Shown: piece by piece, positions 2,012-26,342 of the stretch
Numbering within the stretch: the stretch's first letter is position 1
Layout: the number at the start of each line of letters is the position of its first letter
Assembly: GCA_946965045.2 (NCBI GenBank)
Contig: OX337237.1
Coordinates: 2,108,001-2,172,000 of the forward strand
Reading direction: 5' to 3'
Source of the DNA: Epithemia pelagica
Taxonomy: Eukaryota; Protista; Bacillariophyta
DNA length: 64,000 nt
The notes under the pieces: generated by a model
The model's database searches: none
What the model saw: only the letters and a program-made list of their open reading frames with translations
Told to the model about the DNA's origin: nothing
Made by a program: the position numbers and the translations under genes

Positions 2012-3297
2012 TGAGAGATAGCACAAGTCTGGGTCTTCAGCTTCTATGTTTGGCTAGGTGTTAGTGACATAGTTGCTACTCTGCCTACTAGAGGGCGTGG
2101 GGAGATGTTTCGTGGGTTGGTTCGTTGGGCGTGATTCTGACGTGGAACAGCGTGGTGAAATGGTTTTTATTTAATGGATTGATAAAACAATGGATGACCG
2201 TTCTTCGATCATTCTTTTTCTTCGGGGTTGGATGGTTTTGAATAGGGGTTGGCCCGGCGTTTTTTGCCTAACGTGGGAAGGTTTTGGTGTAAAGTACTGA
2301 ATTTCGACTCTTGAGCTAAAAAATTTTTTTCTAGTCTTTGATGTTTTTCCACCCCCAGACCCCCTTAGCCTGCCGGCTTACCCGACACGTTCATTCTGAA
2401 CTCAGTCGAATACCTATAACTTGTGCGAATACTCATACAACGAAGAAATAAAATGCAAAACCAGACGCATACGGCTACCAGAACCAGGGGCTGATTCATA
2501 ATCGCGCTACTCCGAGGTCTTCAGTCTGGATGGAGATATTCGGTCCTGCTGGTCTGGCCCGCATTCTACCTAGTATACCCCAATGTGCTGCGCTCTACAA
2601 AATTCATTTGGAGACCATAGACCATGACAAGTCGATGGAGACTCTTCACATCACTTCAGCATGTTTGCCAGTTGCCAGTGCAAATTTGCATTCCATTTGG
2701 TACCTTTTCTTGTGACCAAGCAATTAGGATGAAAGACCAAAAGGTCCATAGCAGTAAAACGCAGTCCGATGACAAATTCAGGAACTCCGTAGTAGGAGTA
2801 ACGCTGTACCTTGCAGTCTCCTGCCCACAACAAGAACATCAAGGTTTCTTAGCTGAGAGTGTCAGTGAAATTCATTTCTTGAATCTAGACAGGAATTTTG
2901 CCATTCAACATTCAACACCAACTTTCCAACTAAAATAATTTCATCTGACGACAAGGGACGAGGCAAGTTGCTACCACGCTGGTATTTGGTCATGCAAACA
3001 GCGAGTTTAGAGTTCTTTGCTCGCGCAAACGCACATATCAATCATGAGTCATGAGTCATGAAAACTCCAGCTATTATCTACACAATACAACATACAACAC
3101 GTGCTCGAGAGTTCTCAGCACGTCACATACCGTCAGCCTGACCAGACGAAAATGTGACGAAGATGACGCAATTCCATTATGACACGAGGACGAGGACAAC
3201 TCTAATCTCTAGCTAGAGGAGTAGGACTGTACTCCTACTACGACAGCATCTCGCACACTCCGTACTCCTATTTGAAAGACTACAGATTGACATCCCG

Positions 3298-5217
3298 ATG
3301 GTGTCCAACGTCACGTCAGAGGCAGACATCCTCAGGGGTGACGTGACGTCGGCGGACCTCGGCTTGAGGCAACGCGACAACGACAACGACAAACATGTAA
3401 GGTGTTCAATTGTCGAGTCGAGAATCGAGAGACAAGTAATGAATCATGACAAGAACCACGATGACGGAGATGAAAAGTCAAATACGTTGTTGCAAGACAC
3501 CGACGACAGCGATCACTCACAAGCGAGGAACCCAAGCCGACTGAACAACAAAATATCATGGGTTGATTCCCTCTCAAATCGATTAAGACGATTGCTTTCG
3601 TCGTTGACATACAATAATGAATCGCGACAAAGGATAATGCTTTATTTTTCTCTTGTTGTAATATCCTTCATTGGATATCGAAAGAGAAAGCATTTGATAG
3701 AGCTTTGGAAGGAAGGCGGCCGATTTTTGTCCTCGTTGTCGTCATCGTCGTCGCTGCCAGATCATCGTCGATTAGCAATCGAAGCTCCTTTATCTACCCT
3801 TCTCCGTGCCATATCAAACGGATCGGTGAAACAAGCATTGGTGGGAAGTCGAGTGGTGTATTACTATCTGAATGGAGGGCTTTCGTCAGACACAACGGAG
3901 AAGGGATGGAAGCAGTCCACGTTACCGGGCAACAATACGCTGATGCACGCACGTATTCTTGAGAAACTTGCCCATTCTTCCCCAGAGACCAATGTCTCGC
4001 TCGTAAAAGAATCTCCTTCCCTGCTCAATCAATTGTCCACGCCATTCTTTGCCTCTCTTCCGTTTATCTATCTGGCTTTGCTGTATCGAATGATCCAAAG
4101 ACTTCACAAGAATTCCAATGATCACTCTGATGTCTTTCATGAAAGTACAAAGTCGAGCAGTAGAACCACCACATTTGAGCATGTCGGAGGTTTGGAAGAA
4201 ATATTATTGGAATTGAAGCAAGTCGTCGACTTTTGTCAATATCCAGAACGATATCGTGTTTTGGGAGCTCGTCCTCCTCGAGGCATTCTACTTTATGGAA
4301 AATCGGGCACAGGTAAAACTCTCTTGGCCAAAGCATTGGCGGGGGAAGCCTCCCTTGCAACATCCCCGGATGTCTCCACTAAGCCAGAATCTTCGGCGAC
4401 AACGACGGTCTCAGCTATAGATTCATTCACTGTGTGCTCCGCTTCGGAATTTGTCGAGGTGTATGTTGGACGAGGCGCAGCACGAATTCGAGCTCTCTTT
4501 TCTCTGGCGCGGAAACGGGCATTACAGAACTACAAACAAAAACTTCATGGCTATAGCTCTTCGTCTCCCCTCTCTTGGATCCTTCCACGAGCTCAGGTTA
4601 AAACAGACGGGAATGTGGCCATGCGAAAACCAACGGCACTCATCTTCATAGACGAATTGGATGCGGTAGCCAAGACGCGATCAAACAACACTGGCGGAAC
4701 TGGTTTGTTTCTTGGCAGTACGAACGACGAACGTGAGCAAACCCTCAATCAACTCTTGACAGAAATGGATGGATTTTCGACAAATGATGACGTTTTGGTC
4801 ATTGTTCTAGCGGCCACCAATCGCATTCAGGTGTTGGATCCAGCGATTTTGCGTCGATTCGAACGCCAACTGCATGTAGGATATCCAAACTTGGAAGGAA
4901 GATGCGAGATACTGAAGATTCATGCCCGTCATTTGAAGTTTTCGGAAACGAACAATGAATCCCCAGGCAGAGACAGCGAACTGCCGACAATCGATTGGAT
5001 GCGCCTTGCGGGATCTTGTCAAGGCATGACAGGAGCTGATTTGCAGACAGTGGTCAATGATGCTTCACTTTTGGCTCTGAGGCAACCATCAGGACCATCC
5101 TCTAAGCTGAGTGAAAAGAACTTCCGTGGTGAAGTTATGGTTACAATGGATCACTTTGAACAAGCCATTGCGTCTTTACAACAAAGCAAAGCAAGAAATA
5201 GACTTTCGAAGACATGA
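3298..5217 (+). CDS. FtsH-like membrane AAA+ ATPase without M41 protease domain
   Basis: Two hydrophobic segments, then TFEHVGGLEE, PPRGILLYGKSGTGKT (Walker A), IFIDELD (Walker B), EREQTLNQLLTEMDGF and AATNR. The ORF ends just after the AAA lid with no HExxH. Confidence 0.85.
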   Translation: MVSNVTSEADILRGDVTSADLGLRQRDNDNDKHVRCSIVESRIERQVMNHDKNHDDGDEKSNTLLQDTDDSDHSQARNPSRLNNKISWVDSLSNRLRRLLSSLTYNNESRQRIMLYFSLVVISFIGYRKRKHLIELWKEGGRFLSSLSSSSSLPDHRRLAIEAPLSTLLRAISNGSVKQALVGSRVVYYYLNGGLSSDTTEKGWKQSTLPGNNTLMHARILEKLAHSSPETNVSLVKESPSLLNQLSTPFFASLPFIYLALLYRMIQRLHKNSNDHSDVFHESTKSSSRTTTFEHVGGLEEILLELKQVVDFCQYPERYRVLGARPPRGILLYGKSGTGKTLLAKALAGEASLATSPDVSTKPESSATTTVSAIDSFTVCSASEFVEVYVGRGAARIRALFSLARKRALQNYKQKLHGYSSSSPLSWILPRAQVKTDGNVAMRKPTALIFIDELDAVAKTRSNNTGGTGLFLGSTNDEREQTLNQLLTEMDGFSTNDDVLVIVLAATNRIQVLDPAILRRFERQLHVGYPNLEGRCEILKIHARHLKFSETNNESPGRDSELPTIDWMRLAGSCQGMTGADLQTVVNDASLLALRQPSGPSSKLSEKNFRGEVMVTMDHFEQAIASLQQSKARNRLSKT

Positions 5218-5457
5218 TTTGTAGAACTTGCATATTCTCATCAACATACCACCCACGGATGGCAAATTGGTCATCTACTCTTGGACGAGATGTAGAACTG
5301 CAGTCTTACCAATTGATTCTGGTCACAGGAATATAGTTGAACTCTCCCTTGGGCGTAGTCGCTGTACTATCAACATGGTTCTGAAGTAAGTTTTAGACAC
5401 CTAGCATCAGTCGTTCTTCGTGGAGACTTCACCTGAACACGTTCAGATCCAAATATC

Positions 5458-6948
5458 TTAAAAACGCTTCTCATAGAAAAGATTCTCCAACACTTCATTC
5501 TTGCTGTCACGAAGTTCAAATCGAAGTGGCAAGAAATAATCGGAGATGCCTGCTGGGGTATTGATTTGTATACCTCCTAGAAGAGCAATTTTCTTGTTGC
5601 CCGCGTTTGCGGCTCCCTTCTCCAAGATCTTTTGAATCAAATTATCAACCGGCTCAAAGATTGAATAAGGAAGCTCAATCATGGGATCAGCTGCATTAGC
5701 CAATCTCTGGGCATAAGGGAGAAGTACGCTACCAACGTAGAGTTGTTGGGCGTCAACGTTTTGTGTAGGTGCAGCGGCTTCTTTTACCTCACCCTTGTAG
5801 ACAGAGTTCACGTATCGAGAAGCAGCGACTGCGCTTCCACAGCACGTTCCGCCCTTTTCTTTTCCTCGCCGGTTGACCGTACCGACCTTTGCGTCCCAGT
5901 CGACACCAACATGCGGCCCATAGATCACCAAACAAGATCCACCGTCGGGTACGTGACTCACCATGGCACCAAAAGACGTCACACCTCCTGAAGTTTGAAA
6001 CATGGGTGTCAACAGTGTAAGTATTGCAACAAGCCTCTGTATTTTTCAATTTCAAGAGTAACGACATACCAAATGGAAAGCCGGCCAATCCACCCATGTT
6101 GAAGGGTTGTCCATAAATTTTCCCAATATCTTCCTCAAGTGGCCGGTTCACTTCGTCACAGCAAAACGATGTGGCGACAAGCGTGTTTTTCTCAGTGTAG
6201 CCGTATCGCGACAATGCACTTTGAATTTTGCCGACAAGTTCTTGATTCGATTGAGCTCCTGGAAAAGCTGATTTCACTTTTGCAACAACCGACTGACAAA
6301 CCCAAAATCACATCTGAGGGATGAACCAATTGAAACGAACAAATTTCAATGTTCGGGAAGACTTACAGGGGCACGAGAGTCGAGAATTGGAGAGGGAGCG
6401 GGTATGGACTCGGTACTTTTCGAAGCAAAGGAAGCGGCAGAACCAGCAACTCCAGCGAGAATGCCACCGAGTGAATCGCGGCGATTGCTGTCCAATGCAC
6501 CAACGACAAGACCTCCAAAGGTTCCAGCAGCAGCTGAGGTTGCAATTGCCTCGAGGAGTCCAGGACCTCCACCTTGCTTAGAAATGATTTGGTCATACTC
6601 CTGTTGATTCAATTTTGATTGTGTTACGAGATTGCTCAAATATTGTCGAAACTCCGATAGCCTTGTACCAAGTTGATCTCTAGTCCCATCGGCAAAAGCA
6701 GAAGGTGTTGCCGCAGCGACTGATCCCGGAGACCGGTTGAATAAATCCTCAATCTGAGCAATTTGAAGCTTCAAGGCCTCGATCTCAGCCTGGTTCCGCG
6801 CTTCTGCCGATCGAATGGCAGAAGCTTTGTCCGCGAGAGTGTTTGCCATGTGGAGCAAAGTCGACTTGCGATGGCTTACATGAGGCGCATGAAAGGCGCC
6901 ACATGTGCCGATTAACGCTTGAAGGATAGCCAACACCGAGATCTTCAT
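5458..6948 (-). CDS. LCIB-family / theta-type carbonic anhydrase with plastid presequence and probable Tat thylakoid signal; exons 6948-6367, 6292-6070, 5987-5458 (444 aa)
   Basis: Zn-ligand motifs ATSFCCDE, YGPHVG and TCCGSA, plus GGLAGFPFG. GT-AG introns 6293-6366 and 5988-6069 join three ORFs in frame. The N-terminus is MKISVLAILQALIGTCG-AF, and NRRDSLGGILAGVAGSAASFA lies internally. Confidence 0.88.
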
Positions 6949-7574
6949 GGTTTTTCTGGGTAAAGGTTCTTCAATCAACGACTGTTGTTTGTCGTTGACA
7001 AAGGTAGAAGAGCGATTTGTGGTCGAATTTCGAATTCTCCACATCGAAATACGTCACACCCGAAATGATGCACGTATTGTACGTTCCGTTATAATAGTGT
7101 AGAAGCTAGGAGTCACAGAGGGCGCTTCTGCGAAAGGTAGTATTCATAGGCTGTAGGTAGCTCTCGATACGGATATAGGAGAGTAGCTAGAAATACCCTC
7201 TACAAAGAGACGATCCGACTCTTGGACGCATTCCATTTGCTTGGTTGAAGTGACGTTCAGCTGAGGGCCGAAGATTCAGGCTTTGATCACCTGCAGGAAC
7301 CGAAACAGCTTCTGACCCGGAAGCCGAAAGCCGACATGTCGAATCCACAGCGCGGCTTTTCGTAGGACTCTCTTTTCCATACGGAAGGAAATGTACAACT
7401 CGATCTTCGCGAGAGTTACAATGTTGCGAAGTGCGAGAAGTTCCAGCTGGGTTCACCTTCTCAAGTCGTTCCTTCGACCATGCTGTCCTTTGAAGATGCA
7501 TTTCTTGCGTCGCCTCCGTCATTCAGACATACATACTTTTCTGGATCCGTGTTTATGCTTCATCCTCTACGCGT

Positions 7575-8648
7575 TTATTCCCTTCTTTTTACCTTTTTCA
7601 CTTTCTTTTTCATTTTTGCAGGGTTTTGACTATCGACCAACGAGGGGCGTGGATCATGCAACCCATCAGATCCGCCTTTTGAAGACGACTCTTTGTCTTT
7701 TCGCTTTCTTCGTTTTGTCCAGTGCTGGTGTTGATTCAGTGGTAGTTTTGTCCTCCCATCCATCGGCATTGCTACGTACGTGTTTCTTCTTCCTGAATCC
7801 ATCTTTATCCTTTGGTTCGATGTCATTACTATCCTTGCTTTTCGACGATTTCTTTGAAGCAGATTGTTGAGAAGAGTCCGAAACAACGTTATCATTACTT
7901 CCACCATTCTGCTCGTCCCTCTTTCGTTTCTTCTTTCTCTTCTTGTCAATACGAGCTGTTTCGAGACAAGAAGATCCATCTCCACTGGTCATCGGAACGA
8001 AAGTTTCCTCCGTGCGTGACTCCTTCCTATCTTGATTCTGAACGGATTTCCGCGGCACGTCGTTGGAGGGCAAAGAGGTTGAGGTCCAACAGCTGGTTTC
8101 TCCGAGTTTTGGTTACACTGCCTTACCTTTGATTCTTCTGTCAAGTTCTTTTTGTCCGTTCCATCTCTGTACTGTTTCTTCGCTTGCAGCTTTGCAAGTC
8201 GTTTCGCCTCCAGCTTGGCCTGCTTTTTAGCTGCCAACTTCTCAGCTTTTCGCTGGGATTTCTTCAAGGCTTTTCGTTCTTCTTTGCTGAGTTTCTGCGA
8301 CGTTGTTGTCGATTGAGTTGACAAAGTTTTCTTCGCTATTGAGCTGCTATTCTCCTCGTCAGAGCCATCGTCTTCGTTCTCTTGGTCTTCATCATCTGAA
8401 AAGTTCCTTTTAATAAAGCGACCATCACCATCGTTCGCGAGTCCGTCTTGTTGGTTGTTGTTGTACAGGGCCCCTTCCGGAACAAAGTTTGCGTACAGGG
8501 CATTGTTCGGTAATCCATAATCAATTTTGGTTGTTGTTCCATTTTTCTTTTGCCACGAATATTGTCGTGAAACACCTAGACCCCGTCTGCCACCACTCTG
8601 CAACTTCGACAATGTATCGTGCAACGCTTGTAATTTTGCATCTTCCAT
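7575..8648 (-). CDS. Lysine-rich low-complexity protein (nucleolar-like), with intron 8038-8126 and an apparent 1-nt frameshift near 7715
   Basis: K/E/D-rich ORFs join in frame across AAG|GTAAGG...TTCAG|AAT. The K-rich C-terminus continues in another frame after a 4-A run. Confidence 0.55.
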
Positions 8649-9414
8649 TGTGAACGGGTGTGCACTCTCACTCTCCGCTATTAGGCCATATGATAAACCA
8701 TCAACAAATTCAATAGAATCACAACACAAGAAAATTCAATGGCCGCAAACGCTAAAGGCCATTTGAATCAGGGACGGACGATCGACGGTCGGTTAGCGGT
8801 TATACCGTTACGGTTACGGTGTAGTCATTCACCGAACCCGTCGTTCGAAGGCCAGACGTGCACGGCCAACAAAGTTTCAGCGACCAACATCGGATCGGGT
8901 ATCGGTTACCGCACAATCACACAAGTGCGACGATCATAGAATCGCATTAGAAGAATACAAGAGTCTTCGCTTCTAAAAGCACCATACCAGAGGTGAGTGA
9001 GCAATGACACTGAAAGTAAAAGTCTTATGAAGTCAAGGGTCTTCAAAAGGGAGGATGTTTTTCAGGAAACAGTTTTCTTTCAATCGACAACGACAGGGTC
9101 ATCTTGAAAATGCCACGCGGCATTTGTCTCCAGTGCACGAAGGCAATCCATGTCTTCTCAACACAGTCTTTTCATTATCCTAAACGATACAAGTGGTCAT
9201 GAGGGCATCTCAAATTCAACGTCTGGTGCATTGTGCCGTTGTGGCTGATGATTCGATACAAAGTTGTCGTCATTTTCACAAACTGACATCAGGCGGATCG
9301 TTCCATTCAATTCATACGCCGCTCGTCTTCTCACTCTTTTAGTCTTTTCTTTCATTTATATTTACACCCTTCAGAAATCACTCAAGTTCATTTTCCAGCT
9401 AGGAAACTACCACA

Positions 9415-9645
9415 ATGCCCACTCCAACAGTTGAAAAGGAAGGATTCAATGAAGTCTTGGTGGAACCTTTGAAACAATTCGCCAAAGATTCCATGCATTT
9501 GGTCAAGAAATGCACGAAACCGGATCGGAAAGAGTTTATTTCCATTGCAAGGGCGACTGGAATTGGTTTCTGCATCATGGGATTTATTGGATTTTTTGTG
9601 AAACTCATACACATTCCTATTAACAACATCTTGGTAGGAAATTAA
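9415..9645 (+). CDS. SEC61G: Protein translocon subunit Sec61 gamma
   Basis: [13 protein letters not shown]...[27 protein letters not shown] is the SecE/Sec61-gamma signature. Confidence 0.97.
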
Positions 9646-10042
9646 TGTACCTATATTAACTTGAAGAGATGGTTCCAGATTTTGTAGTATTGTTCCATAA
9701 CCTATCTATTGGACTCTCATTTCCTTTACCAGCATTTCACTCCATTGAGCCAGCAACTGCTTTGCCATGCAGCTATGATAAGACGAAAAGCACTGTTAAC
9801 GCGTCGTTTATGCTTTATCAAGCCACCCTTTGAGCTTGCACTTTAATCGTTTCGCCGTGTTCCAAACAAATCGATATGGAGTGTCCGGAGAGGACCTTTT
9901 TCCACGACACTGAAGTCAATGGAAGGCTTCATTCAGAAGGAGTAAAGACAAGACATTGAGTGTTTGGAGTAAGAGGTTCTGAGGTCAAAAATCGTTCACT
10001 CAATCAAGTCTCCTTTTTAAAAATGGCATGCCGTCATGTGTA

Positions 10043-14370: not shown

Positions 14371-14886
14371 GATGATGATGATGATGATGATAAAAGTTAA
14401 ACTGCAGAAATCCAATCCCTCTCAAAGTTCTTCTTCAAGACTGCACCAGTTTTAGTGCGAATGCCTTTCTCTTGAAGGGAAGCGCTATTCAATTGATAAC
14501 CTCACAGCAACGAACGGGGCAACCGCAGCTACAACATCCAATCCTCTGTCGATGATGGAAAAAGGGTCACGCAAGAAAAGGCATGAAGTCACTGCTATCT
14601 TCGATGGGCCCATGCTGGGGGAAAAAGATGCGCGAGTCAACCCAAGAATCTTGCGCGAATCGGATGTGCGACGGCGTGTTATGGAGATCCCCTGGCGCGC
14701 ATCTTTTCTCCGGACGGACGGGCGCGGACCGCGACGCGCTTCAAGATCCATCTCCTTGGCCATAACCGACAGTCCGATTCCTCAACCTTGACAAGCTACT
14801 GCTACTTCTCTAAATTTCCTTTATTTGTTCAGGTCATTTTGCATCGTTCAAAGAAGACGTGTTGTCGTTGGTGTTCAGTTGACCTT

Positions 14887-16755
14887 ATGGGAAATTCTAC
14901 AATGACGCCATCCACTCCCTTGATGCCCATGAAGAACCAGCAGGGACCTCATCCAAGTGTCGGTGATGAATGTCCTCCTTTTCTACGAGCTGAAACATCT
15001 GTATCATCATCGTCCTCGTCATCGATTCTTGGGCGTTTGGACACAACAACAAATCCGCAAGACCATCGTCAATCACCGAACCCTCCGCTTTCACAAGGCG
15101 ACAACTGTACTGACTCTTGTGCTTGTTCAAGCGCGGCCTCTCGAGGGCGCAGCTCTTACCATAACCTCCGTAGTTCTGTGGTAACAATCGAGAACAAATG
15201 CAATGACAATCATGGCCAAGACGAAAATATCGTCACTGAAGAAATGATGCAAGCCTGGCTGTGTAGGCCTATCAGTTCCAATGATGACGAATCTGAAGCG
15301 GGCCTTCCCTCGGCGTCAGTGTCGCAACAACAACCATACTCGCTTCATGGATCAGCCCGAAAATCCTACCTATCTTGGGATGACTATTTTATGGCGACAG
15401 CCTGCTTATCGTCTTTGCGATCCAAGGAACCACCACCAACGGGCCAAGGTCCAGATATGGAGGATCATGTACGGGGAGGTTGCTGTATTGTCCACTCCGA
15501 AACCAAGCGCATCTTGGCAGTGGGATATACCGGATTTCCACGAGCCACATCCGACGAAGTACTGCCCTGGCATGACGCTGCGAAACCACCTGTTCCCTCC
15601 AATGAACAGGAAGACGCCAACAGCAACAACAATGCTACTCCTCGTCGGCCATGGTTGTGGACTAGAGAACCCTATGTCGTCCATGCGGCCGTGAATGCAA
15701 TTCTCAACAATCACAGCAAGGGTCACAACAGTTTGGCGGGTGCTCGCATGTATTTGACACACTTTCCATGTCACGAATGTGCCAGAGTGCTCATTCAAGC
15801 GGGGATTCGACACGTCATATACCAGCAACGGTCCATATCCACCAATCGTCCCCCGTCGACAAGGATAGGACAGCAGCTTCTTCAGGTGGTGACATGTAGT
15901 AGTGGTGCCAGTGGAGACGAAGCGGCCGCACAAGAATCCATCGCCGCTAGTCGAATCATGCTTCAGCTGGCTGGTGTCCGGGTACAGACCTTTCGACCTC
16001 AAAAGTCCACGGGAACAGATATTCAAATTTCCTTGCAAGCTTCCGTGATACCATCACCAGCTTCAAAGCTCGAATCGGATTCTCAGCGCGAAAATGCATC
16101 CTATTCGATCAACAATCAGACCATTCATGAAACGAACGATTTGCATTTGAGGCACAAATTTCGTGATTTGGTGAAGAAAGAGACACGTGGATATGATCCG
16201 GTAGTTGAATCTTCAGGTCGTCGTCCAAGTCACAATGCTGGCGTTTTGCTATCCTGGAAGGACTATTTTATGGCCCTTGCAAGTTTGACTGCGCAACGAA
16301 GCAAGGATCCGAATACGCAAGTTGGAGCTTGTCTCGTCGATTCAGCAACGAATCGTATTGTTGGCTTAGGGTACAATGGTTTTCCCACGGGATGTTCCGA
16401 TCAAGTCTTGCCATGGGGACGCGGCGGGAGCGGGAGTACACTCCAGTCAAAATACATGTACGTATGCCATGCCGAAGTAAATGCTATTCTGAATCGAATC
16501 GATGACACGGCCACTACCCATCAACAAGATACCACCCTCTATGTGGCTTTGTTCCCTTGTCACGCCTGCGCAAAGGTCATCGTGCAGACGGGGAATATTC
16601 GGCGAATTGTCTATCAACATGACAAATACCATGACTCAGATTCTTGTCGAGCATCACGCATTCTTCTCACCATGGCCAACATTGAATTGGTTCCTTATCG
16701 GCCTGATACAAGCGACACCTCCATCACCATTTCCCTCTCACCATGCGCTCGTTAG
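14887..16755 (+). CDS. DCTD: dCMP deaminase with two tandem deaminase domains; the first lacks the catalytic Glu
   Basis: Domain 1: SWDDYFM...HAAVNA...PCHEC. Domain 2: SWKDYFM...RSKDPNTQVGAC...GYNGFP...HAEVNA...PCHAC. Confidence 0.92.
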   Translation: MGNSTMTPSTPLMPMKNQQGPHPSVGDECPPFLRAETSVSSSSSSSILGRLDTTTNPQDHRQSPNPPLSQGDNCTDSCACSSAASRGRSSYHNLRSSVVTIENKCNDNHGQDENIVTEEMMQAWLCRPISSNDDESEAGLPSASVSQQQPYSLHGSARKSYLSWDDYFMATACLSSLRSKEPPPTGQGPDMEDHVRGGCCIVHSETKRILAVGYTGFPRATSDEVLPWHDAAKPPVPSNEQEDANSNNNATPRRPWLWTREPYVVHAAVNAILNNHSKGHNSLAGARMYLTHFPCHECARVLIQAGIRHVIYQQRSISTNRPPSTRIGQQLLQVVTCSSGASGDEAAAQESIAASRIMLQLAGVRVQTFRPQKSTGTDIQISLQASVIPSPASKLESDSQRENASYSINNQTIHETNDLHLRHKFRDLVKKETRGYDPVVESSGRRPSHNAGVLLSWKDYFMALASLTAQRSKDPNTQVGACLVDSATNRIVGLGYNGFPTGCSDQVLPWGRGGSGSTLQSKYMYVCHAEVNAILNRIDDTATTHQQDTTLYVALFPCHACAKVIVQTGNIRRIVYQHDKYHDSDSCRASRILLTMANIELVPYRPDTSDTSITISLSPCAR

Positions 16756-20892: not shown

Positions 20893-22794
20893 CTATCGGC
20901 CGTTGGGAGCCGTTTCCTTGCATTCGGGGATGAACCTGTCCACATCAATCGGATATAGACTCTTGATGCGTTTGTGCTCTTGTCTGGCGTAATGTTCTAA
21001 TGAAGTCCAAACACTAATGTTGTTCTTTGCTCGAGAAAAAGACGGTATTCCACGAGGATGACGACGTTCCAACCATTCCAGAATACCTTCAGGGATTTCG
21101 GTAGCCAAGGTGCTACTAAGGTAACTGGAATTGATAGACAGTAAATGATCCACGGCTTGCGTCAACTCCAGGAGAGTCTCGGCTAGCGAGAAGTAGTCTT
21201 GACCATATATTAACTCCTGAAGCTGCCACAAATGCAAGGCCGTCACAATCAGTCGTCCAAAAAACCTGCTGCGTTGCGATACAGACGGTAATATATTTTG
21301 TTGCAGCTGGTCTTGCTGTAACAGTAGGTCACACGATTGAAGATGCAGCTCACGACATGAGAGCAACAAGATGTGTTGTTGATTCTGAAGCTGATCTTGG
21401 GCCGTCTCGGCGAGTTGGAGAGCGGCAATCTCCAGCGCTTTCGCGCGTTCAATTTCATCTGCTGGCAATCGGACCAGGTAACTCGGTGACCCTCCACTCT
21501 TGCTAGAACTATCGGACGTGACGTTGCTCAATGGCTGTCCATTCTTTATGATTTCTTGTAGTTCTTCCTCCAACTGACTTGTTGTCTTCTCGATTCTTCG
21601 TTGTATCGGATAGCCTTCCTCTTCGTTGATGCTACCTCTATCGTCCATCAGCAGTGGTTGTATTTGAGAGGGAGGCAAACGATTTCCAATCAATTCCATT
21701 GCATATAGCCAAGGGTTTCTCTCAAATGACACTCCAATGTCAAACCTGTGGTGATCCCAAAGTTGCCATCTCCTTGATGAGTGAGATAGTAATTTAGGTA
21801 AATACGAAATGGTTAAAGGTTCTCCCTGTGCAATTGGACGAATAGCACGGATTTCAGATAAACTTGATTGCGTTCCTGATGGATTATGATTGTTTGGTCC
21901 CCGAAACTTTACACAATTCGGAACATCGGCATGGTTCAGCATCGCTGCAAAGAGAAAAATCCCCGTTTCCAAGCTGTTGTATCGTAGCGCAACAAGAAGT
22001 CTAAGAATATCCAGTCGACCAAAGGCCGTGGTATCGCTGTTGTGAATATTGGATACCAGCGCAAACTGGATTAGACTCGTTATCTGTTCAGATTCTTCGC
22101 CATATTGATTCTCGTATTTGAGTATCATGCCCCTGAGTTGCTGATCCACGGTATCTTTCGTCGATGGGTTTTCGACTTTTCTATTCGGCGACATATTTGA
22201 AGCATCTGATATATCACCGTTGGGACTGCAGGAACTTTTGTCGCCAGTCTTGGCAACGCCTTCTTCATGAAACATCTTGTCCACCAACGTTTTGGTTGGA
22301 TAAAAGTGTTCTAAAGGATGCAAGATACCAGAAGCGTTTGGTTGTTGCAATAAAAAAGCAATGAGATCCAGGTCAATTATCACATTTGGGGCCGGCCACA
22401 AAACCAAAGCTTCTTCCACCATTAATAGTGTTCCAGATGTCACTGGTGACGCGGCTACCAATCCTCGTCCTCCACCAAAACAATCCAGACGAGAGGATAC
22501 TGCCACATTAGGGCTCATATACAGAGGCATGGGCCATGGAAGCTGAATTGTTTCTTTCTCTATCGGGATCTTCAAAATTCGAGAGGCCACGTTAGAAGTA
22601 TAAGTCGGTGCAACAGCTTCAAATGAAGTATCCTTCGAAGCCTTGTTGTTTTTTCCAAATGCCATGGACTCATTCACCTGATTGGCGAGCGATCTCGCAA
22701 CCATCAGGACATCGGGTTTCTCATAAGATGTTTCCGGACCATTTTCCCCTTCTTCATCATCACCAAAGACGGCAAAGGGATCATCGTCTGCCAT
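20893..22794 (-). CDS. SET-domain lysine methyltransferase (SMYD-like split SET)
   Basis: GGRGLVAA (SET-N), IFLFAAMLNHADVPNC and IRAIRPIAQGEPLTISYL, followed by a helical C-terminus. The start was taken at MADDDPF. Confidence 0.8.
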   Translation of the reverse strand: MADDDPFAVFGDDEEGENGPETSYEKPDVLMVARSLANQVNESMAFGKNNKASKDTSFEAVAPTYTSNVASRILKIPIEKETIQLPWPMPLYMSPNVAVSSRLDCFGGGRGLVAASPVTSGTLLMVEEALVLWPAPNVIIDLDLIAFLLQQPNASGILHPLEHFYPTKTLVDKMFHEEGVAKTGDKSSCSPNGDISDASNMSPNRKVENPSTKDTVDQQLRGMILKYENQYGEESEQITSLIQFALVSNIHNSDTTAFGRLDILRLLVALRYNSLETGIFLFAAMLNHADVPNCVKFRGPNNHNPSGTQSSLSEIRAIRPIAQGEPLTISYLPKLLSHSSRRWQLWDHHRFDIGVSFERNPWLYAMELIGNRLPPSQIQPLLMDDRGSINEEEGYPIQRRIEKTTSQLEEELQEIIKNGQPLSNVTSDSSSKSGGSPSYLVRLPADEIERAKALEIAALQLAETAQDQLQNQQHILLLSCRELHLQSCDLLLQQDQLQQNILPSVSQRSRFFGRLIVTALHLWQLQELIYGQDYFSLAETLLELTQAVDHLLSINSSYLSSTLATEIPEGILEWLERRHPRGIPSFSRAKNNISVWTSLEHYARQEHKRIKSLYPIDVDRFIPECKETAPNGR

Positions 22795-23063
22795 TCTGAA
22801 GACGTCTCTTTTTTTTGATAATATGGTTGGTGGCCTGTAGCACGTGGGTCGCGCATCTGGGGATGGTGGATCGGTTCCCAGCGCTACTACAGTTGCCTTG
22901 CCACGGCGCCATTCCAAATTCCCAAGGCGTGACGGCATCCGGGTCGATGTAAGGTAACTTCTTCTTGTTGACTTTGTTTCTGACCACGAGCTTGCTTGGA
23001 GATGACCTTTTGCTTCCATACTTACCTCTACGGCAAGTTTCATTAACAGTCGCGTTGACAAGG

Positions 23064-26000
23064 ATGACAACAGAGACCTCTTTGCTGGGAAGCCCTTCCT
23101 ATGATGAAACACAATCGGACCAAACAGAAAACGTCAACTGGTATTCAAAAGCAGCAATAATCTGGGACCCATCTTCTGTAAAAAATGATATTGATTACTG
23201 GGATTCAGGTGACATCGAGAAATGGATCGAGGAGTATCCTTCAGACGGTATTGAAAGCAACAAAGAAGAAGTACTACTGCGAGGAATATCTTATGACATG
23301 TTGCATAGCATCGTAACAGTGTTGTCAAGCAAGCTCTTGAAGGAAATTGAAGTAAAACAACAATCCAATGAGCCCCGATCCATCCATTCTTCTTCAATGG
23401 TAGCGAATAAGCCATGCCTGGTCGTTGCAGTGGCGATTCCTGAAGGTTTCTACCTTCCCATTGCCATCTCCACAGTGTACGCCATGAACAAATATTATAA
23501 GGGAGGCCTTGGGTTCTCCGTCGCTCTTCTTCCACTGGATCCAACCGAAGGCGTTGATCGGGTCCATCATATTCTGCAAGATGCCCAACCGTACATGATT
23601 CTCACGGCGAGCGCCATGGATATAGTGCGATTGGAGAAAATAATCGTGGATATCTCGGCGAAAAACCCTGGTCCATCTGAATCAAAATCTTTAATCTCCC
23701 CACTGATGATCGATATTCCAGGCTGTGTTCATAGCATTGTGAAAGACACGCAGAGTCCAAGAAACAAACAGAAGAGGGAGTGTCTATTTGGTTTTCTTGA
23801 CCAACTTAAAACGGACGACTCAGAGAAAAACCAGAACTGTGAGCAAGCCCTATCTCACATCGTATATACTTCGGGAACAACAGGTATGCCAAAAGGCTGC
23901 GTATCATCCATGCGCTCGCTGGAGCACTATATCGAAATGAAAAACAGAGTGCATGGAATATCAAGTTCGTCCACGGTCCTTCTTGCATCGTCGATTTCAT
24001 TTGATCCATGTCTGTCGGACGTACTCGCAACTTTTGCTGCTTTCGCGACGCTGGGACTGACGCCCAGACAGGTTCTAAAATCTTCTTTGCATGCTTCATT
24101 GCGACGATTGGAGATCTCGCACATTCTTTGTACACCAACGCTTTGGAGCTCTCTCATGGCATCTGGAGCCGAACCCATTCATTTTCCTTGTTTAAAGGTC
24201 GTGGCCCTTGGTGGAGAACCCATTCCACCGCGAATCCGGAGAATTTGGGCGCGAAAACATAAGAAGACGACCTCAGAAGAATGTTATGGAGCCATGTTGC
24301 TTGCAACCTATGGCGTGACTGAAGCGTGCGTCTACCAAACAGCAGGTGAAATATGCTATACTGATGGAGATGGATCAGCTCAACCCCGGGGACAAGATGT
24401 TGGTCGTCCATTTCCTGGGATGGGTATTCGTGTGTGCAGTGAATCTGAAGATCCAAAGAAGCTTTTGGATCTGGATCAAGCAGTCGATGGTCCCGAAAGT
24501 GCTGGAGAGGTAATACTTTATGGAAGGCAGGTAGACAGCTTGTCGTCGTACTTGAATCAGGACAGTCTTTCACGGCAAAAATTCCTAGAACATGATGGCA
24601 CTTTCTTTCATCGGACCGGTGATCGTGGGATTGTAGATCGCAGAACCGGGAATCTTCATATTTTAGGAAGAATAGAAGGGGAAACAGGAATGGTCAAGTT
24701 CAATGGAGTGCGCCTGGAACTTGGAGAGATTGAAAATGCCTTGGTCGACAGCTTGGACAAAGGCGTCGTGGTTGACAGCATCGCAGGGGTCGAAAGGGAC
24801 CGATGCGAATCTGATCCCAAACTTGTGGCCTATGTCGTGTTAAGTCGCGACTGTTTGGAAGAACTGAAGCTCGTGGACTCAGTTCCAGTGAATGGTGCGA
24901 TCTGCATGGGTCCATTGTTGACGCTTCTTCGAGAACGGTGTCGACGCAAATGCCGCGTAGTTCCGAACATGTTCATTGTTGTTCCCCGCATTCCGCTTTC
25001 TCCAACCGGAAAACGCGATCGAAACAGTGCTCCCCTCACATCGAAGGCGGTACCCTCAGCGTCATTGACGGAGCAGGTGTTTTCCTCTTCCTCAACACAG
25101 CTACTCAAAGACTACAGCAGATTGGGTGCCTTCTTGGCGGAGCAACTTGTGGACTGTCTGAATCTTCATGCAAGCCAACAAGGAGCTCTTTTGACCACAA
25201 AAGCGACGTTTGACATGTTAGGAGGTGATTCGCTGGCGGCTACTCGAGTTGTACGAGCGCTCTATTCCCACTTTCATGGAGTAGCCAACTCTCGGTTGTT
25301 GGGAGGTGCTCATGGGATTCTCGATGATGACCGTTTTTCGCCTGTTCATTTGATCCAAGCTCCTAGCTTAGGAGACTATGCTGATTTTCTTGATCGTGAA
25401 ACTGGTGGCGCAGTTAAGGGAGGAACCACTGCAGAAATTCTCAAGCATAGATGTTCCAGTGGTAGGGATGAAAGTGGAATCGTATCCGCATCCGATAGTG
25501 GCGAAGTCTCAAAAGACAACGGTATTGCCGACAATATCCTTAATGAAGCTCTTTTGGAAGTATGCACTCGAGGACACGCCATTCTTGCGCTGGCTTTGCT
25601 CGAGGTGGGTGCGGATCCCAATTTTAATGCTGCTGACACACGGAATCATCGGTTAGGCAAAGTTGGTAGCAGGAACGAACGTAAGCAGGTTTTCGCATCA
25701 ACTCCGCTTCACCACGCTTGCCTTCGGGGGAATCCTATCTTGGTGCAAGCTCTTCTGGACAAAGGTGCAAAAACTACAGTACCGGATGCGTCGGGTACGT
25801 TTCCCGTTCACCTGGCGGCTGGTGGTCGTAGAGGTGAGACTAGCGCATCTGGACATTGTTACTGGGCGTGTGTGAGCCTCCTACTGGACCAAGCGCGCCT
25901 TCCATTGACGATGAAAGATGGAAATGGCCAGACTATCTTCCACTGTGCGGCCCGCTCTGGACAAGATGTTGTGTTAGAGAAACTGTTGGAACGACTGAAT

Positions 26001-26342
26001 GAGCAAGATGACACAAAAGACGAACCCAAGTTGCTCTCCTCTTCCAAACATAGCCTGTCGCCTTTGAACTGGCGCGATCGATGGTCGCGAACCGCCGTGC
26101 ATTGGGCTGTCATCAATGGTCACTTGAGCACCCTTCAGATCTTGCTCAGCGCTGGCTGCCATGCTGATCCAGTGCTTCCGCACCGAAACAAAAGCACAAG
26201 CGCAGCACTAGAGCGTCCATTGGATCTCTGTGATCGTGTATATATGTCTGCTAGTGGCGGATCAGCTTGCAGTTCGAAGCGCACAGACTTGGGAATGGCC
26301 ATGAAAAAGTTATTGGAGGAATCCATGGCTAAACGAAGCTAA
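23064..26342 (+). CDS. Single-module NRPS-like protein: adenylation - thiolation (PCP) - ankyrin repeats
   Basis: A-domain cores YTSGTTGMPKG, SFDP, GGE, YGVTE, RTGD, KFNGVRLELGEIE and LSPTGKRDR. PCP motif FDMLGGDSL (Ser codon 25230). Ankyrin repeats TPLHHAC, FPVHLAA, TIFHCAA and TAVHWAV. Confidence 0.9.
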   Translation: MTTETSLLGSPSYDETQSDQTENVNWYSKAAIIWDPSSVKNDIDYWDSGDIEKWIEEYPSDGIESNKEEVLLRGISYDMLHSIVTVLSSKLLKEIEVKQQSNEPRSIHSSSMVANKPCLVVAVAIPEGFYLPIAISTVYAMNKYYKGGLGFSVALLPLDPTEGVDRVHHILQDAQPYMILTASAMDIVRLEKIIVDISAKNPGPSESKSLISPLMIDIPGCVHSIVKDTQSPRNKQKRECLFGFLDQLKTDDSEKNQNCEQALSHIVYTSGTTGMPKGCVSSMRSLEHYIEMKNRVHGISSSSTVLLASSISFDPCLSDVLATFAAFATLGLTPRQVLKSSLHASLRRLEISHILCTPTLWSSLMASGAEPIHFPCLKVVALGGEPIPPRIRRIWARKHKKTTSEECYGAMLLATYGVTEACVYQTAGEICYTDGDGSAQPRGQDVGRPFPGMGIRVCSESEDPKKLLDLDQAVDGPESAGEVILYGRQVDSLSSYLNQDSLSRQKFLEHDGTFFHRTGDRGIVDRRTGNLHILGRIEGETGMVKFNGVRLELGEIENALVDSLDKGVVVDSIAGVERDRCESDPKLVAYVVLSRDCLEELKLVDSVPVNGAICMGPLLTLLRERCRRKCRVVPNMFIVVPRIPLSPTGKRDRNSAPLTSKAVPSASLTEQVFSSSSTQLLKDYSRLGAFLAEQLVDCLNLHASQQGALLTTKATFDMLGGDSLAATRVVRALYSHFHGVANSRLLGGAHGILDDDRFSPVHLIQAPSLGDYADFLDRETGGAVKGGTTAEILKHRCSSGRDESGIVSASDSGEVSKDNGIADNILNEALLEVCTRGHAILALALLEVGADPNFNAADTRNHRLGKVGSRNERKQVFASTPLHHACLRGNPILVQALLDKGAKTTVPDASGTFPVHLAAGGRRGETSASGHCYWACVSLLLDQARLPLTMKDGNGQTIFHCAARSGQDVVLEKLLERLNEQDDTKDEPKLLSSSKHSLSPLNWRDRWSRTAVHWAVINGHLSTLQILLSAGCHADPVLPHRNKSTSAALERPLDLCDRVYMSASGGSACSSKRTDLGMAMKKLLEESMAKRS

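What the first reader, a model, noticed from the sequence alone, without database searches (positions are those of the whole stretch)
23064..26342. A-T-ankyrin NRPS-like enzyme with no condensation, thioesterase or reductase domain
The protein has a complete adenylation domain and a PCP with an intact GGDS, but ends in about 4-5 ankyrin repeats. The substrate pocket starts FDP, as in beta-alanine-activating AASDH/ACSF4 (TFDPSV) and other DP-type domains for non-standard amino acids. AASDH ends in a PQQ-type beta-propeller, Ebony in an amine-selecting domain and Lys2 in a reductase. Ankyrins bind proteins, so this may be an undescribed protein-aminoacylation (post-translational modification) enzyme or a carrier that hands its load to a partner (inference).
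Basis: partly seen in the sequence, partly recalled or inferred. Interest (0 to 1): 0.75.

Follow-up and report, generated by a model that had tools for sequence, protein, structure and literature searches.

The report
Diatom-wide adenylation–carrier–ankyrin enzyme
This diatom gene encodes a conserved enzyme that should load an unidentified amino acid onto its own carrier arm and ends in a protein-docking ankyrin domain instead of any known release domain; it occurs across diatoms, and I found no published function for it.

Summary
Observation confirmed. Window 23064-26342 (+) is one uninterrupted 1092-aa ORF in a diatom chromosome. It encodes an NRPS-type adenylation domain, a carrier domain (LGGDSL, Ser723), a disordered linker and about five ankyrin repeats. 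It has no condensation, thioesterase or reductase domain, and the whole genome has no condensation domain.

More than 380 orthologues share this architecture. Every named one is a diatom, pennate or centric, and full-length transcripts show the fusion is real. Catalytic motifs, the carrier serine and the ten-residue specificity code (DPSLAGTVYK) are almost invariant. The code keeps Asp235 and Lys517, the amino-acid signature, but matches none of 213 bacterial codes better than 6/10. The ankyrin part is as conserved as the enzyme part.

The AASDH analogy holds for architecture only. The genome has its own ACSF4-type gene (A-T-beta-propeller, A4 motif FVDG) with no detectable similarity to this protein. 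The nearest relatives outside the family are bacterial NRPS adenylation domains, at about 30% identity.

Best reading: a cytosolic stand-alone loading module whose ankyrin tail docks a trans-acting partner or acceptor. Substrate, partner and product are unknown. Protein aminoacylation is possible but unsupported. I found no paper on this architecture. Verdict: a new variant of a known kind, of moderate interest.

The parts
23064..26342 (+). Complete intronless coding sequence (1092 aa plus stop) of the A-T-Ank protein
   Evidence: uninterrupted ORF, first ATG at 23064; orthologues align end to end.
23136..24743 (+). Adenylation domain, large N-terminal subdomain (aa ~25-560), with motifs A1-A7; variable low-confidence inserts at aa 203-207 and 243-259
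   Evidence: Pfam AMP-binding 1.2e-33; TIGR01733 2e-48; AF2 secondary structure; invariant SHIVYTSGTTGxPKG, TYGVTEACVYQT and YRTGD
24000..24011 (+). A4 motif FDPC (Asp314 = Stachelhaus position 235, Pro315 = position 236), the start of the substrate pocket
   Evidence: Translation; F313, D314, P315 and C316 invariant in 26 of 26 sequences; code columns validated
24744..25058 (+). Adenylation domain, small C-terminal subdomain (aa 561-665), with motifs A8-A10 including Lys650 (= position 517)
   Evidence: AF2; invariant G535, R536, K545, G548, R550, E552 and P644...T648, G649, K650
25125..25403 (+). Carrier (thiolation/PCP) domain, aa 688-780; phosphopantetheine-attachment Ser723 at 25230-25232
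   Evidence: LGGDSLA; GGDSL invariant; four helices in AF2; Pfam PP-binding weak here but listed for orthologues P0132 and P0133; the most conserved domain, at 56% mean identity
25404..25511 (+). Disordered, non-conserved linker between the carrier and ankyrin domains (aa 781-816)
   Evidence: pLDDT below 50 for aa 785-819; 10% mean identity across orthologues for aa 781-825
25512..26198 (+). Ankyrin-repeat domain (aa 817-1045): N-cap repeat, conserved basic loop (RLGKV..R..R), then four TPLH-type repeats with two inserts
   Evidence: Pfam Ank_2/Ank/Ank_3/Ank_4/Ank_5; helix pairs in AF2; 46% mean identity; invariant R863, F877, P881, H883 and G889
26199..26339 (+). C-terminal helical tail (aa 1046-1092), possibly a half repeat or cap
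   Evidence: Helices 1052-1061 and 1071-1091 in AF2; 35% mean identity

Best explanation
This is a cytosolic, stand-alone NRPS-like loading module that is conserved across diatoms.

Proposed mechanism, in order:
1. The adenylation domain uses ATP to form an aminoacyl-AMP from one fixed, still unidentified amino acid. The substrate is probably neutral and carries an amino group.
2. The aminoacyl group is transferred as a thioester to the phosphopantetheine arm on Ser723 of the enzyme's own carrier domain.
3. No condensation, thioesterase or reductase domain exists in the protein, and no condensation domain exists in the genome. The flexibly tethered ankyrin domain therefore acts as a docking platform.
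4. It brings the loaded carrier to a trans-acting partner, either a tailoring or transfer enzyme or the acceptor itself, which takes the aminoacyl group.

What is shown: the domain set, the intact catalytic residues, the invariant pocket, the conservation of the ankyrin part, and the fusion in mRNA.

What is inferred: enzymatic activity, the amino-acid nature of the substrate, the cytosolic location, and the docking role of the ankyrin domain. The partner and the product are unknown.

The A-T part is of bacterial NRPS type. It was probably joined to the ankyrin domain before pennate and centric diatoms diverged.
For: - Domains: searches give an NRPS-type adenylation domain, a carrier domain and ankyrin repeats, and nothing else.
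- Conservation: in 26 orthologues motifs A3-A10, GGDSL and the pocket are invariant. The carrier (56%) and ankyrin (46%) domains are at least as conserved as the adenylation domain (43%), while the linker is not (10%).
- Specificity code: the columns used recover the canonical Thr, Tyr and Ile codes exactly (Phe and Val within one residue) from 213 bacterial domains. The family code DPSLAGTVYK is identical in 156 of about 170 members and keeps Asp235 and Lys517. By established knowledge (Conti 1997; Stachelhaus 1999) these bind the substrate's amino and carboxyl groups.
- Distribution: more than 380 orthologues have the same architecture, and all named ones are diatoms, both pennate and centric.
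- Fusion: full-length MMETSP transcripts, for example Conticribra weissflogii at 1234 aa, show the fusion in mRNA.
- Inheritance: the gene tree follows diatom taxonomy.
- Genome context: no Condensation domain in the genome and two phosphopantetheinyl transferases present.
- Location: the N-terminus is acidic with no hydrophobic signal peptide (read from the sequence).
- Precedent: single PKS/NRPS domains fused to ankyrin or HEAT repeats have been noted in dinoflagellates (PMC6361889).
Against: - There is no biochemical evidence. The substrate cannot be predicted: the best match to any of 213 bacterial codes is 6/10.
- No partner was identified, and there is no conserved synteny.
- Ankyrin repeats could serve localisation or regulation rather than hand-over.
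- Pfam PP-binding is below its cut-off in this copy.
- The absence of a condensation domain rests on a six-frame HMM scan that scores only the best candidates.
- A non-canonical releasing enzyme would not be recognised by these searches.
Confidence: 0.55

Rival explanations
1. It is a protein-aminoacylation enzyme. The ankyrin domain binds a target protein directly, and a Lys, Ser or N-terminal nucleophile of that protein attacks the aminoacyl thioester, creating a post-translational mark.
For: - The same domain facts apply. There is no release domain and no condensation domain in the genome.
- The ankyrin surface is strongly conserved, including a basic loop.
- An invariant pocket across all diatoms fits a housekeeping function.
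- From my own knowledge, untested here: ACBD6 (acyl-CoA-binding plus ankyrin) supports N-myristoyltransferase, and zDHHC13/17 recruit their substrates through ankyrin repeats.
- ACSF4 has been proposed to act in post-translational modification (PMC10531068).
Against: - No target, no modified protein and no catalytic residues for transfer are known.
- Ankyrin repeats have no precedent as acyl-transfer catalysts, and uncatalysed thioester aminolysis is slow.
- Nothing in the data separates this reading from small-molecule transfer.
Confidence: 0.12
2. It is the diatom version of AASDH/ACSF4-U26: a beta-alanine-activating enzyme whose beta-propeller was replaced by ankyrin repeats.
For: The overall logic is the same: an A-T module plus a non-catalytic protein-interaction domain.
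Against: - The genome has its own ACSF4-type gene with a beta-propeller. Its A4 motif is FVDG, as in two diatom orthologues.
- BLASTP and phmmer find no similarity between the two proteins, while bacterial NRPS domains score 44-94 bits.
- ACSF4 clusters are absent from the 30 nearest ESM clusters of this protein.
- From my own knowledge, the known beta-alanine codes carry Val-Asp at positions 235/236, not Asp-Pro.
Confidence: 0.04
3. It activates a carboxylic acid that is not an amino acid (fatty, aryl, keto or hydroxy acid) and acts as a loader for lipid or polyketide-type chemistry.
For: - JGI and UniRef automatic names call it an acyl-CoA synthetase or AMP-dependent ligase.
- NCBIfam also gives weaker hits to fatty-acid ligases.
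- The code is unlike any known amino-acid code.
Against: - The best family hit is the amino-acid adenylation domain TIGR01733.
- Asp235 is invariant. From my own knowledge, it is normally replaced in aryl-, keto- and hydroxy-acid-activating domains.
- The nearest relatives are NRPS amino-acid modules.
Confidence: 0.1
4. It is a non-catalytic scaffold or sensor: a pseudo-enzyme that binds an amino acid or ATP and signals through the ankyrin domain.
For: No downstream catalytic domain. Terminal branches in the gene tree are long.
Against: Every catalytic motif, the carrier serine and Lys517 are invariant across the pennate and centric diatoms aligned. This is the pattern of an active enzyme.
Confidence: 0.05
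5. The fusion is an annotation artefact, and the ankyrin part is a separate gene.
For: None was found. A few database orthologues lack the ankyrin part (P0121, P0123, P0124, P0126, P0134).
Against: - There is a single ORF with no stop.
- More than 100 orthologues are fused, and complete transcriptome ORFs carry both parts.
- Most of the Ank-less models sit on contigs of 2.4-5.9 kb, or end right after the carrier domain, so they are probably truncated.
Confidence: 0.02

Closest known systems
AASDH / ACSF4-U26 (beta-alanine-activating enzyme of animals; A-T-beta-propeller)
   Same: A single A-T module with no C, TE or R domain, ending in a repeat domain of the protein-interaction type. The acceptor is unknown.
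   Different: The C-terminal fold differs: ankyrin here, PQQ-like beta-propeller there. This genome has its own ACSF4-type gene with A4 motif FVDG, and the two proteins show no detectable pairwise similarity. It is an analogue, not an orthologue.
Stand-alone bacterial A-T didomain loaders (for example SyrB1, CmaA, NovH/NikP1 type) and DltA/DltC
   Same: The amino acid is loaded on a carrier and then handled by trans-acting enzymes. Bacterial NRPS adenylation domains are the nearest sequence and structure relatives.
   Different: Those lie in gene clusters that name their partners. This one is a eukaryotic, unclustered gene with a fused ankyrin domain and a specificity code seen in none of 213 bacterial domains.
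Ebony (insect A-T-amine-selecting domain), and Lys2 / CAR / ATRR / PtNRPS1 (A-T-R or A-T-R1-R2)
   Same: Single-module NRPS-like enzymes of eukaryotes. PtNRPS1 (A-T-R1-R2, tryptophanol) shows that diatoms use such enzymes in primary physiology (PMC13194791).
   Different: Those carry a catalytic release domain. Here the C-terminus is ankyrin only, with no NAD_binding or other catalytic Pfam hit. No sequences of Ebony or Lys2 were available for a tree.
Dinoflagellate monofunctional PKS/NRPS domains fused to ankyrin, HEAT or PPR repeats
   Same: Trans-acting synthetase domains fused to repeat scaffolds (PMC6361889; PMC8283056).
   Different: Those were reported as a general pattern in another phylum, with no function assigned. 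Homology to this diatom family was not tested.

Membership tests
NRPS-type adenylation domain (ANL superfamily, TIGR01733) | Core motifs A3 (TSGTTGxPKG), A5 (YGxTE), A7 (YxTGD), A8 (GRxD..K.RG.RIE) and A10 (PxxxxGK) | tested here: met
   All are present and invariant in 26 orthologues. TIGR01733 scores 2e-48, though below the full-length cut-off. PDB sequence and fold hits are NRPS adenylation domains.
NRPS-type adenylation domain (amino-acid-activating) | Asp235 and Lys517 of the Stachelhaus code | tested here: met
   D314 and K650 are invariant. The columns used recover the canonical Thr, Tyr and Ile codes exactly, and the Phe and Val codes within one residue.
Carrier protein (PP-binding, PF00550) | GGxS motif with a conserved Ser at the start of helix 2 of a four-helix bundle | tested here: met
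   LGGDSL is invariant. AF2 shows the helices. The Pfam score here is 16.9 bits, below the 20.8 cut-off, but the family is listed for orthologues P0132 and P0133.
Carrier protein (PP-binding, PF00550) | Phosphopantetheinylation of the serine | not testable with these tools
   Two ACPS-type transferases are encoded in the genome. The modification itself needs mass spectrometry.
Canonical NRPS module | A condensation domain, in cis or in trans | tested here: not met
   No PF00668 hit in the protein or in a six-frame scan of the 60.5-Mb genome at E <= 0.01.
AASDH / ACSF4-U26 | C-terminal ACSF4 beta-propeller (PF13570/PF13360) | tested here: not met
   The C-terminus is ankyrin. The propeller occurs in a different gene of this genome.
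AASDH / ACSF4-U26 | Adenylation domain groups with ACSF4 adenylation domains | tested here: not met
   No BLASTP or phmmer similarity to the three diatom ACSF4-type proteins. No ACSF4 cluster among the 30 nearest ESM clusters. Animal sequences could not be fetched.
A-T-R reductase-type NRPS-like enzymes (Lys2, CAR, ATRR, PtNRPS1) | Terminal NAD(P)-binding reductase domain | tested here: not met
   No such Pfam hit and no Rossmann-type strand-helix pattern after the carrier domain in AF2.
Ankyrin-repeat proteins | Tandem 33-residue helix-turn-helix repeats with the TPLH signature | tested here: met
   Five Pfam Ank families, E from 1e-16 to 2e-11. Helix pairs in AF2. PDB hits are ankyrins and DARPins.
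dAnk proteins of the diatom silica deposition vesicle | Homology to Tp23225, Tp5147 or Tp21058, and localisation to the silica deposition vesicle | not tested
The paper describes Ank-only proteins and its main text does not mention an AMP-binding domain.

The most novel reading that the evidence does not exclude
The A-T-Ank enzyme is the core of a diatom-specific, ribosome-independent aminoacylation system. The ankyrin domain docks it onto a defined protein or membrane complex, for example at the cytosolic face of the silica deposition vesicle where ankyrin-only dAnk proteins act. The carrier-bound amino acid is then transferred directly onto a protein or a diatom-specific biomolecule. This would be a new kind of post-translational or biomineral-related modification, made by an enzyme with a new specificity code.
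Probability: 0.1. Interest if true: 0.85.

Novelty: new variant of a known kind. Interest (0 to 1): 0.55.

Why it matters
Diatoms carry out a large share of ocean primary production, yet few of their lineage-specific enzymes have a known function. This single-copy gene is found across pennate and centric diatoms. Its substrate pocket is invariant and unlike any pocket in the comparison set, and it has no built-in way to release its product.

Identifying the substrate and the ankyrin partner would reveal one of two things. It could be a conserved diatom metabolite pathway, as PtNRPS1 did for tryptophanol. It could also be a non-ribosomal aminoacyl transfer to a macromolecule.

The work would also give a second, independent example alongside animal AASDH, whose acceptor is still unknown, of an A-T module fused to a protein-interaction domain. 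A tractable diatom model could therefore help with that older question.

Tried and rejected
1. Phylogeny against animal AASDH, Ebony and Lys2. No such sequences could be obtained by reference. The search seeded with the genome's own ACSF4-type gene returned only two diatom proteins, and the AASDH paper is not held. I used the three diatom ACSF4-type proteins instead.

2. The big representative search for a single-module outgroup. After about 70 family clusters the list fills with giant bacterial NRPSs, whose summed scores hide any small outgroup. It was useful only for per-domain comparison and for the code survey.

3. My first mapping of code positions 299 and 301 was one column off. The error showed because canonical codes were not recovered, and it was corrected.

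4. Conserved synteny as a way to find a partner. None was found in a close relative or in a centric diatom.

5. Extra domains in longer orthologues, as a Rosetta-stone hint. None was found; the extra length is insertions.

6. A link to dAnk silica proteins. Only the paper's main text was available, with no sequences or supplements, so this was not tested.

7. Coordinates of the AF2 model are not exposed to scripts. Contacts between the ankyrin and carrier domains could therefore not be measured.

8. Earlier scan notes hold nothing on this gene.
Full report
**What is there**

The window is nuclear DNA of a diatom: contig 10 of a 60.5-Mb assembly in 23 contigs. Its neighbours are eukaryotic, including a SET-domain gene and a double deaminase-domain gene. 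There are no tRNA genes, and GC content is about 46-47%.

The finding is one uninterrupted ORF. Its first ATG is at 23064, its stop at 26340-26342, and it encodes 1092 aa.

Domain evidence from sequence:
- Pfam finds AMP-binding (aa 147-490, 1.2e-33) and five ankyrin families (about aa 860-1035).
- Pfam also finds a weak PP-binding match around LGGDSL. No Condensation, Thioesterase or reductase family is hit.
- NCBIfam's best model is the amino-acid adenylation domain TIGR01733 (2e-48).
- The best solved-structure relatives by sequence are NRPS adenylation domains such as ApnA A1 and LgrA, followed by ankyrins and DARPins.

An AlphaFold2 model built on 26 orthologues has pLDDT 77 and pTM 0.74. 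It shows:
- both adenylation subdomains (aa ~25-560 and 561-665);
- a four-helix carrier domain (aa 688-780) with Ser723 at the start of helix 2;
- a disordered linker (aa 785-819);
- about five ankyrin helix pairs plus two C-terminal helices (aa 817-1091).

No other fold appears. Foldseek's top matches are adenylation-carrier modules of DhbF, LgrA and EntF. I checked the key coordinates by translation: FDPC at 24000-24011 and LGGDSLA at 25218-25238.

**Is it a real, fused, functional gene?**

- A word-indexed search found 381 relatives. All 120 listed have the AMP-binding plus ankyrin architecture.
- Every one that carries an organism name is a diatom: Epithemia, Amphora, Nitzschia, Mayamaea, Fistulifera, Pseudo-nitzschia, Thalassiosira, Skeletonema and Cyclotella.
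- Several are complete ORFs from MMETSP transcriptomes, for example Thalassiosira minuscula and Conticribra weissflogii at 1234 aa. The ankyrin part is therefore on the same mRNA.
- The few members without ankyrin hits mostly lie on contigs of 2.4-5.9 kb or end right after the carrier domain, so they are probably truncated models. Longer members carry insertions, not extra domains.
- A quick maximum-likelihood tree recovers taxonomic groups: Thalassiosirales, Nitzschia plus Pseudo-nitzschia, and the window with Epithemia. This points to vertical inheritance from an early diatom.
- In a 26-sequence alignment, motifs A3, A4, A5, A7, A8 and A10 and the GGDSL motif are invariant.
- Mean identity to the window protein is 43% for the large and 41% for the small adenylation subdomain, 56% for the carrier domain and 46% for the ankyrin domain. 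It is only 10% for the carrier-ankyrin linker.
- The ankyrin domain is thus under constraint as strong as the enzyme's, and it is attached by a flexible tether.

**The substrate pocket**

I aligned the family and 653 adenylation domains from 88 giant bacterial NRPSs to one profile and read off the ten Stachelhaus positions. My first column choice for positions 299 and 301 was wrong. After correction, the columns recover the textbook Thr, Tyr and Ile codes exactly, and the Phe and Val codes within one residue.

- With these columns the family code is DPSLAGTVYK. The residues are 314, 315, 318, 355, 381, 383, 415, 423, 424 and 650.
- The code is identical in 156 of about 170 family sequences.
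- Asp235 and Lys517 are kept. By established knowledge of PheA, these bind the amino and carboxyl groups of an amino-acid substrate.
- The best match to any of the 213 complete bacterial codes is 6/10, which is 4 of the 8 variable positions.
- Pro at position 236 occurs once in 215 domains.

The enzyme therefore very probably activates one fixed amino acid, or at least an amino-bearing acid. The pocket residues are uncharged. Its identity cannot be read from known codes.

**Relation to AASDH**

The same genome encodes a separate A-T-beta-propeller gene on contig 6 (locus L004).
- That gene has a weak Pfam Beta-prop_ACSF4 hit. Its language-model features score 0.97 against the chordate cluster named beta-alanine-activating enzyme.
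- Its A4 motif is TFVDG, and two diatom orthologues have F-V-D-G at the same place.
- BLASTP and phmmer find no similarity between these proteins and the A-T-Ank protein. The same phmmer run gives 44-94 bits per domain against bacterial NRPS modules.
- ACSF4 clusters are not among the 30 nearest clusters of the A-T-Ank protein. After its own family come bacterial A-T proteins.
- The A-T-Ank gene is therefore not the diatom's AASDH. Its A-T part is of bacterial NRPS type, at about 30% identity.
- I could not verify the statement that animal AASDH reads TFDPSV.

**Context**

- The genome shows no Condensation domain in a six-frame scan.
- It encodes two phosphopantetheinyl transferases.
- It contains only this one NRPS-type A-T match.
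- Gene neighbourhoods are not conserved in a close relative or in Thalassiosira profunda.
- The N-terminus is acidic and has no signal-peptide-like hydrophobic stretch, so a cytosolic location is inferred.

**Mechanism**

My best reading (confidence about 0.55) is as follows. The adenylation domain forms an aminoacyl-AMP and loads it as a thioester on the phosphopantetheine arm of Ser723. The flexibly tethered, conserved ankyrin domain docks the loaded carrier to a trans-acting partner or acceptor, which removes the aminoacyl group.

- Shown: the domains, the intact catalytic residues, the invariant pocket, conservation of the ankyrin part, and the fusion in mRNA.
- Inferred: enzymatic activity, the class of substrate, the cytosolic location and the docking role.

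Rival readings:

| Rival | Confidence |
|---|---|
| Direct protein aminoacylation | 0.12 |
| Activation of a non-amino carboxylic acid | 0.10 |
| Pseudo-enzyme or sensor | 0.05 |
| AASDH orthologue activating beta-alanine | 0.04 |
| Gene-model artefact | 0.02 |

**Literature**

Nine full-text searches found no paper on an adenylation-carrier-ankyrin protein in diatoms or elsewhere. The nearest statements are:
- monofunctional PKS/NRPS domains fused to ankyrin, HEAT or PPR repeats in Symbiodiniaceae (PMC6361889);
- ankyrin-bearing FabD-like acyltransferases in dinoflagellates (PMC8283056);
- the diatom A-T-R1-R2 enzyme PtNRPS1, which makes tryptophanol (PMC13194791);
- an algal genome-mining survey that mentions unexplained 'Other(A)' proteins in diatoms (PMC7073580);
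- ankyrin-only dAnk proteins, which act at the silica deposition vesicle (PMC9894196). A link to them is speculation and was not tested.

Databases already hold automatic names such as 'acyl-CoA synthetase/ankyrin repeat protein' and 'Ligase/ankyrin repeat fused protein'. The architecture is therefore catalogued but not studied.

**Verdict**

The gene is real, conserved and apparently unstudied. It is an NRPS-like loading module with an unusual docking tail and a new specificity code, which makes it a new variant of a known kind. Interest is moderate (0.55): it is a good, testable target for enzymology in a major algal group, but nothing yet shows new chemistry.

No contig was taken for human, and no spliced model or read-through was needed.

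Noticed in passing
L004 (G000:C6:1193500-1202500), about 2373-7335 +: This is the genome's own AASDH/ACSF4-type gene (A-T-beta-propeller). Its reading frame changes near L004:3610-3641, inside a low-complexity stretch: the N-terminal adenylation part is in one frame (2373-3641) and the rest is a 1241-aa ORF (3610-7335). The cause could be a short intron or a frameshift; I did not resolve which. Its A4 motif is TFVDG.
   Followed up: partly
L005 (G000:C3:614000-623999), 4194-9920 +: A 1908-aa ORF with AMP-binding (2e-45), PP-binding (4e-10) and a weak hexapeptide-repeat hit near aa 1490. A hydrophobic stretch follows the carrier domain. This is another unusual A-T-plus-something protein, unrelated to the A-T-Ank gene by BLASTP.
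   Followed up: partly
G000:C2:2502733-2576677 (-): A tandem array of at least five AMP-binding paralogues within about 75 kb. One match contains an internal TGA. The matches come from the six-frame Pfam scan.
   Followed up: no
window 20893-23112 (-): A SET-domain gene lies head to head with the A-T-Ank gene. Its listed ORF starts with GTG at 23112 and overlaps the A-T-Ank start. In-frame ATGs at 23019, 22938, 22866 and 22794 leave the true start, and so the length of the shared promoter region, uncertain.
   Followed up: partly
window 14788-16755 (+): A 655-aa ORF with two cytidine/deoxycytidylate deaminase zinc-binding stretches (6e-41); the better-scoring one covers aa 489-609.
   Followed up: no
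alignment A1 / tree: The family evolves fast overall: median terminal branch is 0.68 changes per site, and identity between pennate and centric members is 35-45%. The ten pocket residues and the carrier motif nonetheless stay fixed. The contrast suggests strong selection on one substrate.
   Followed up: partly
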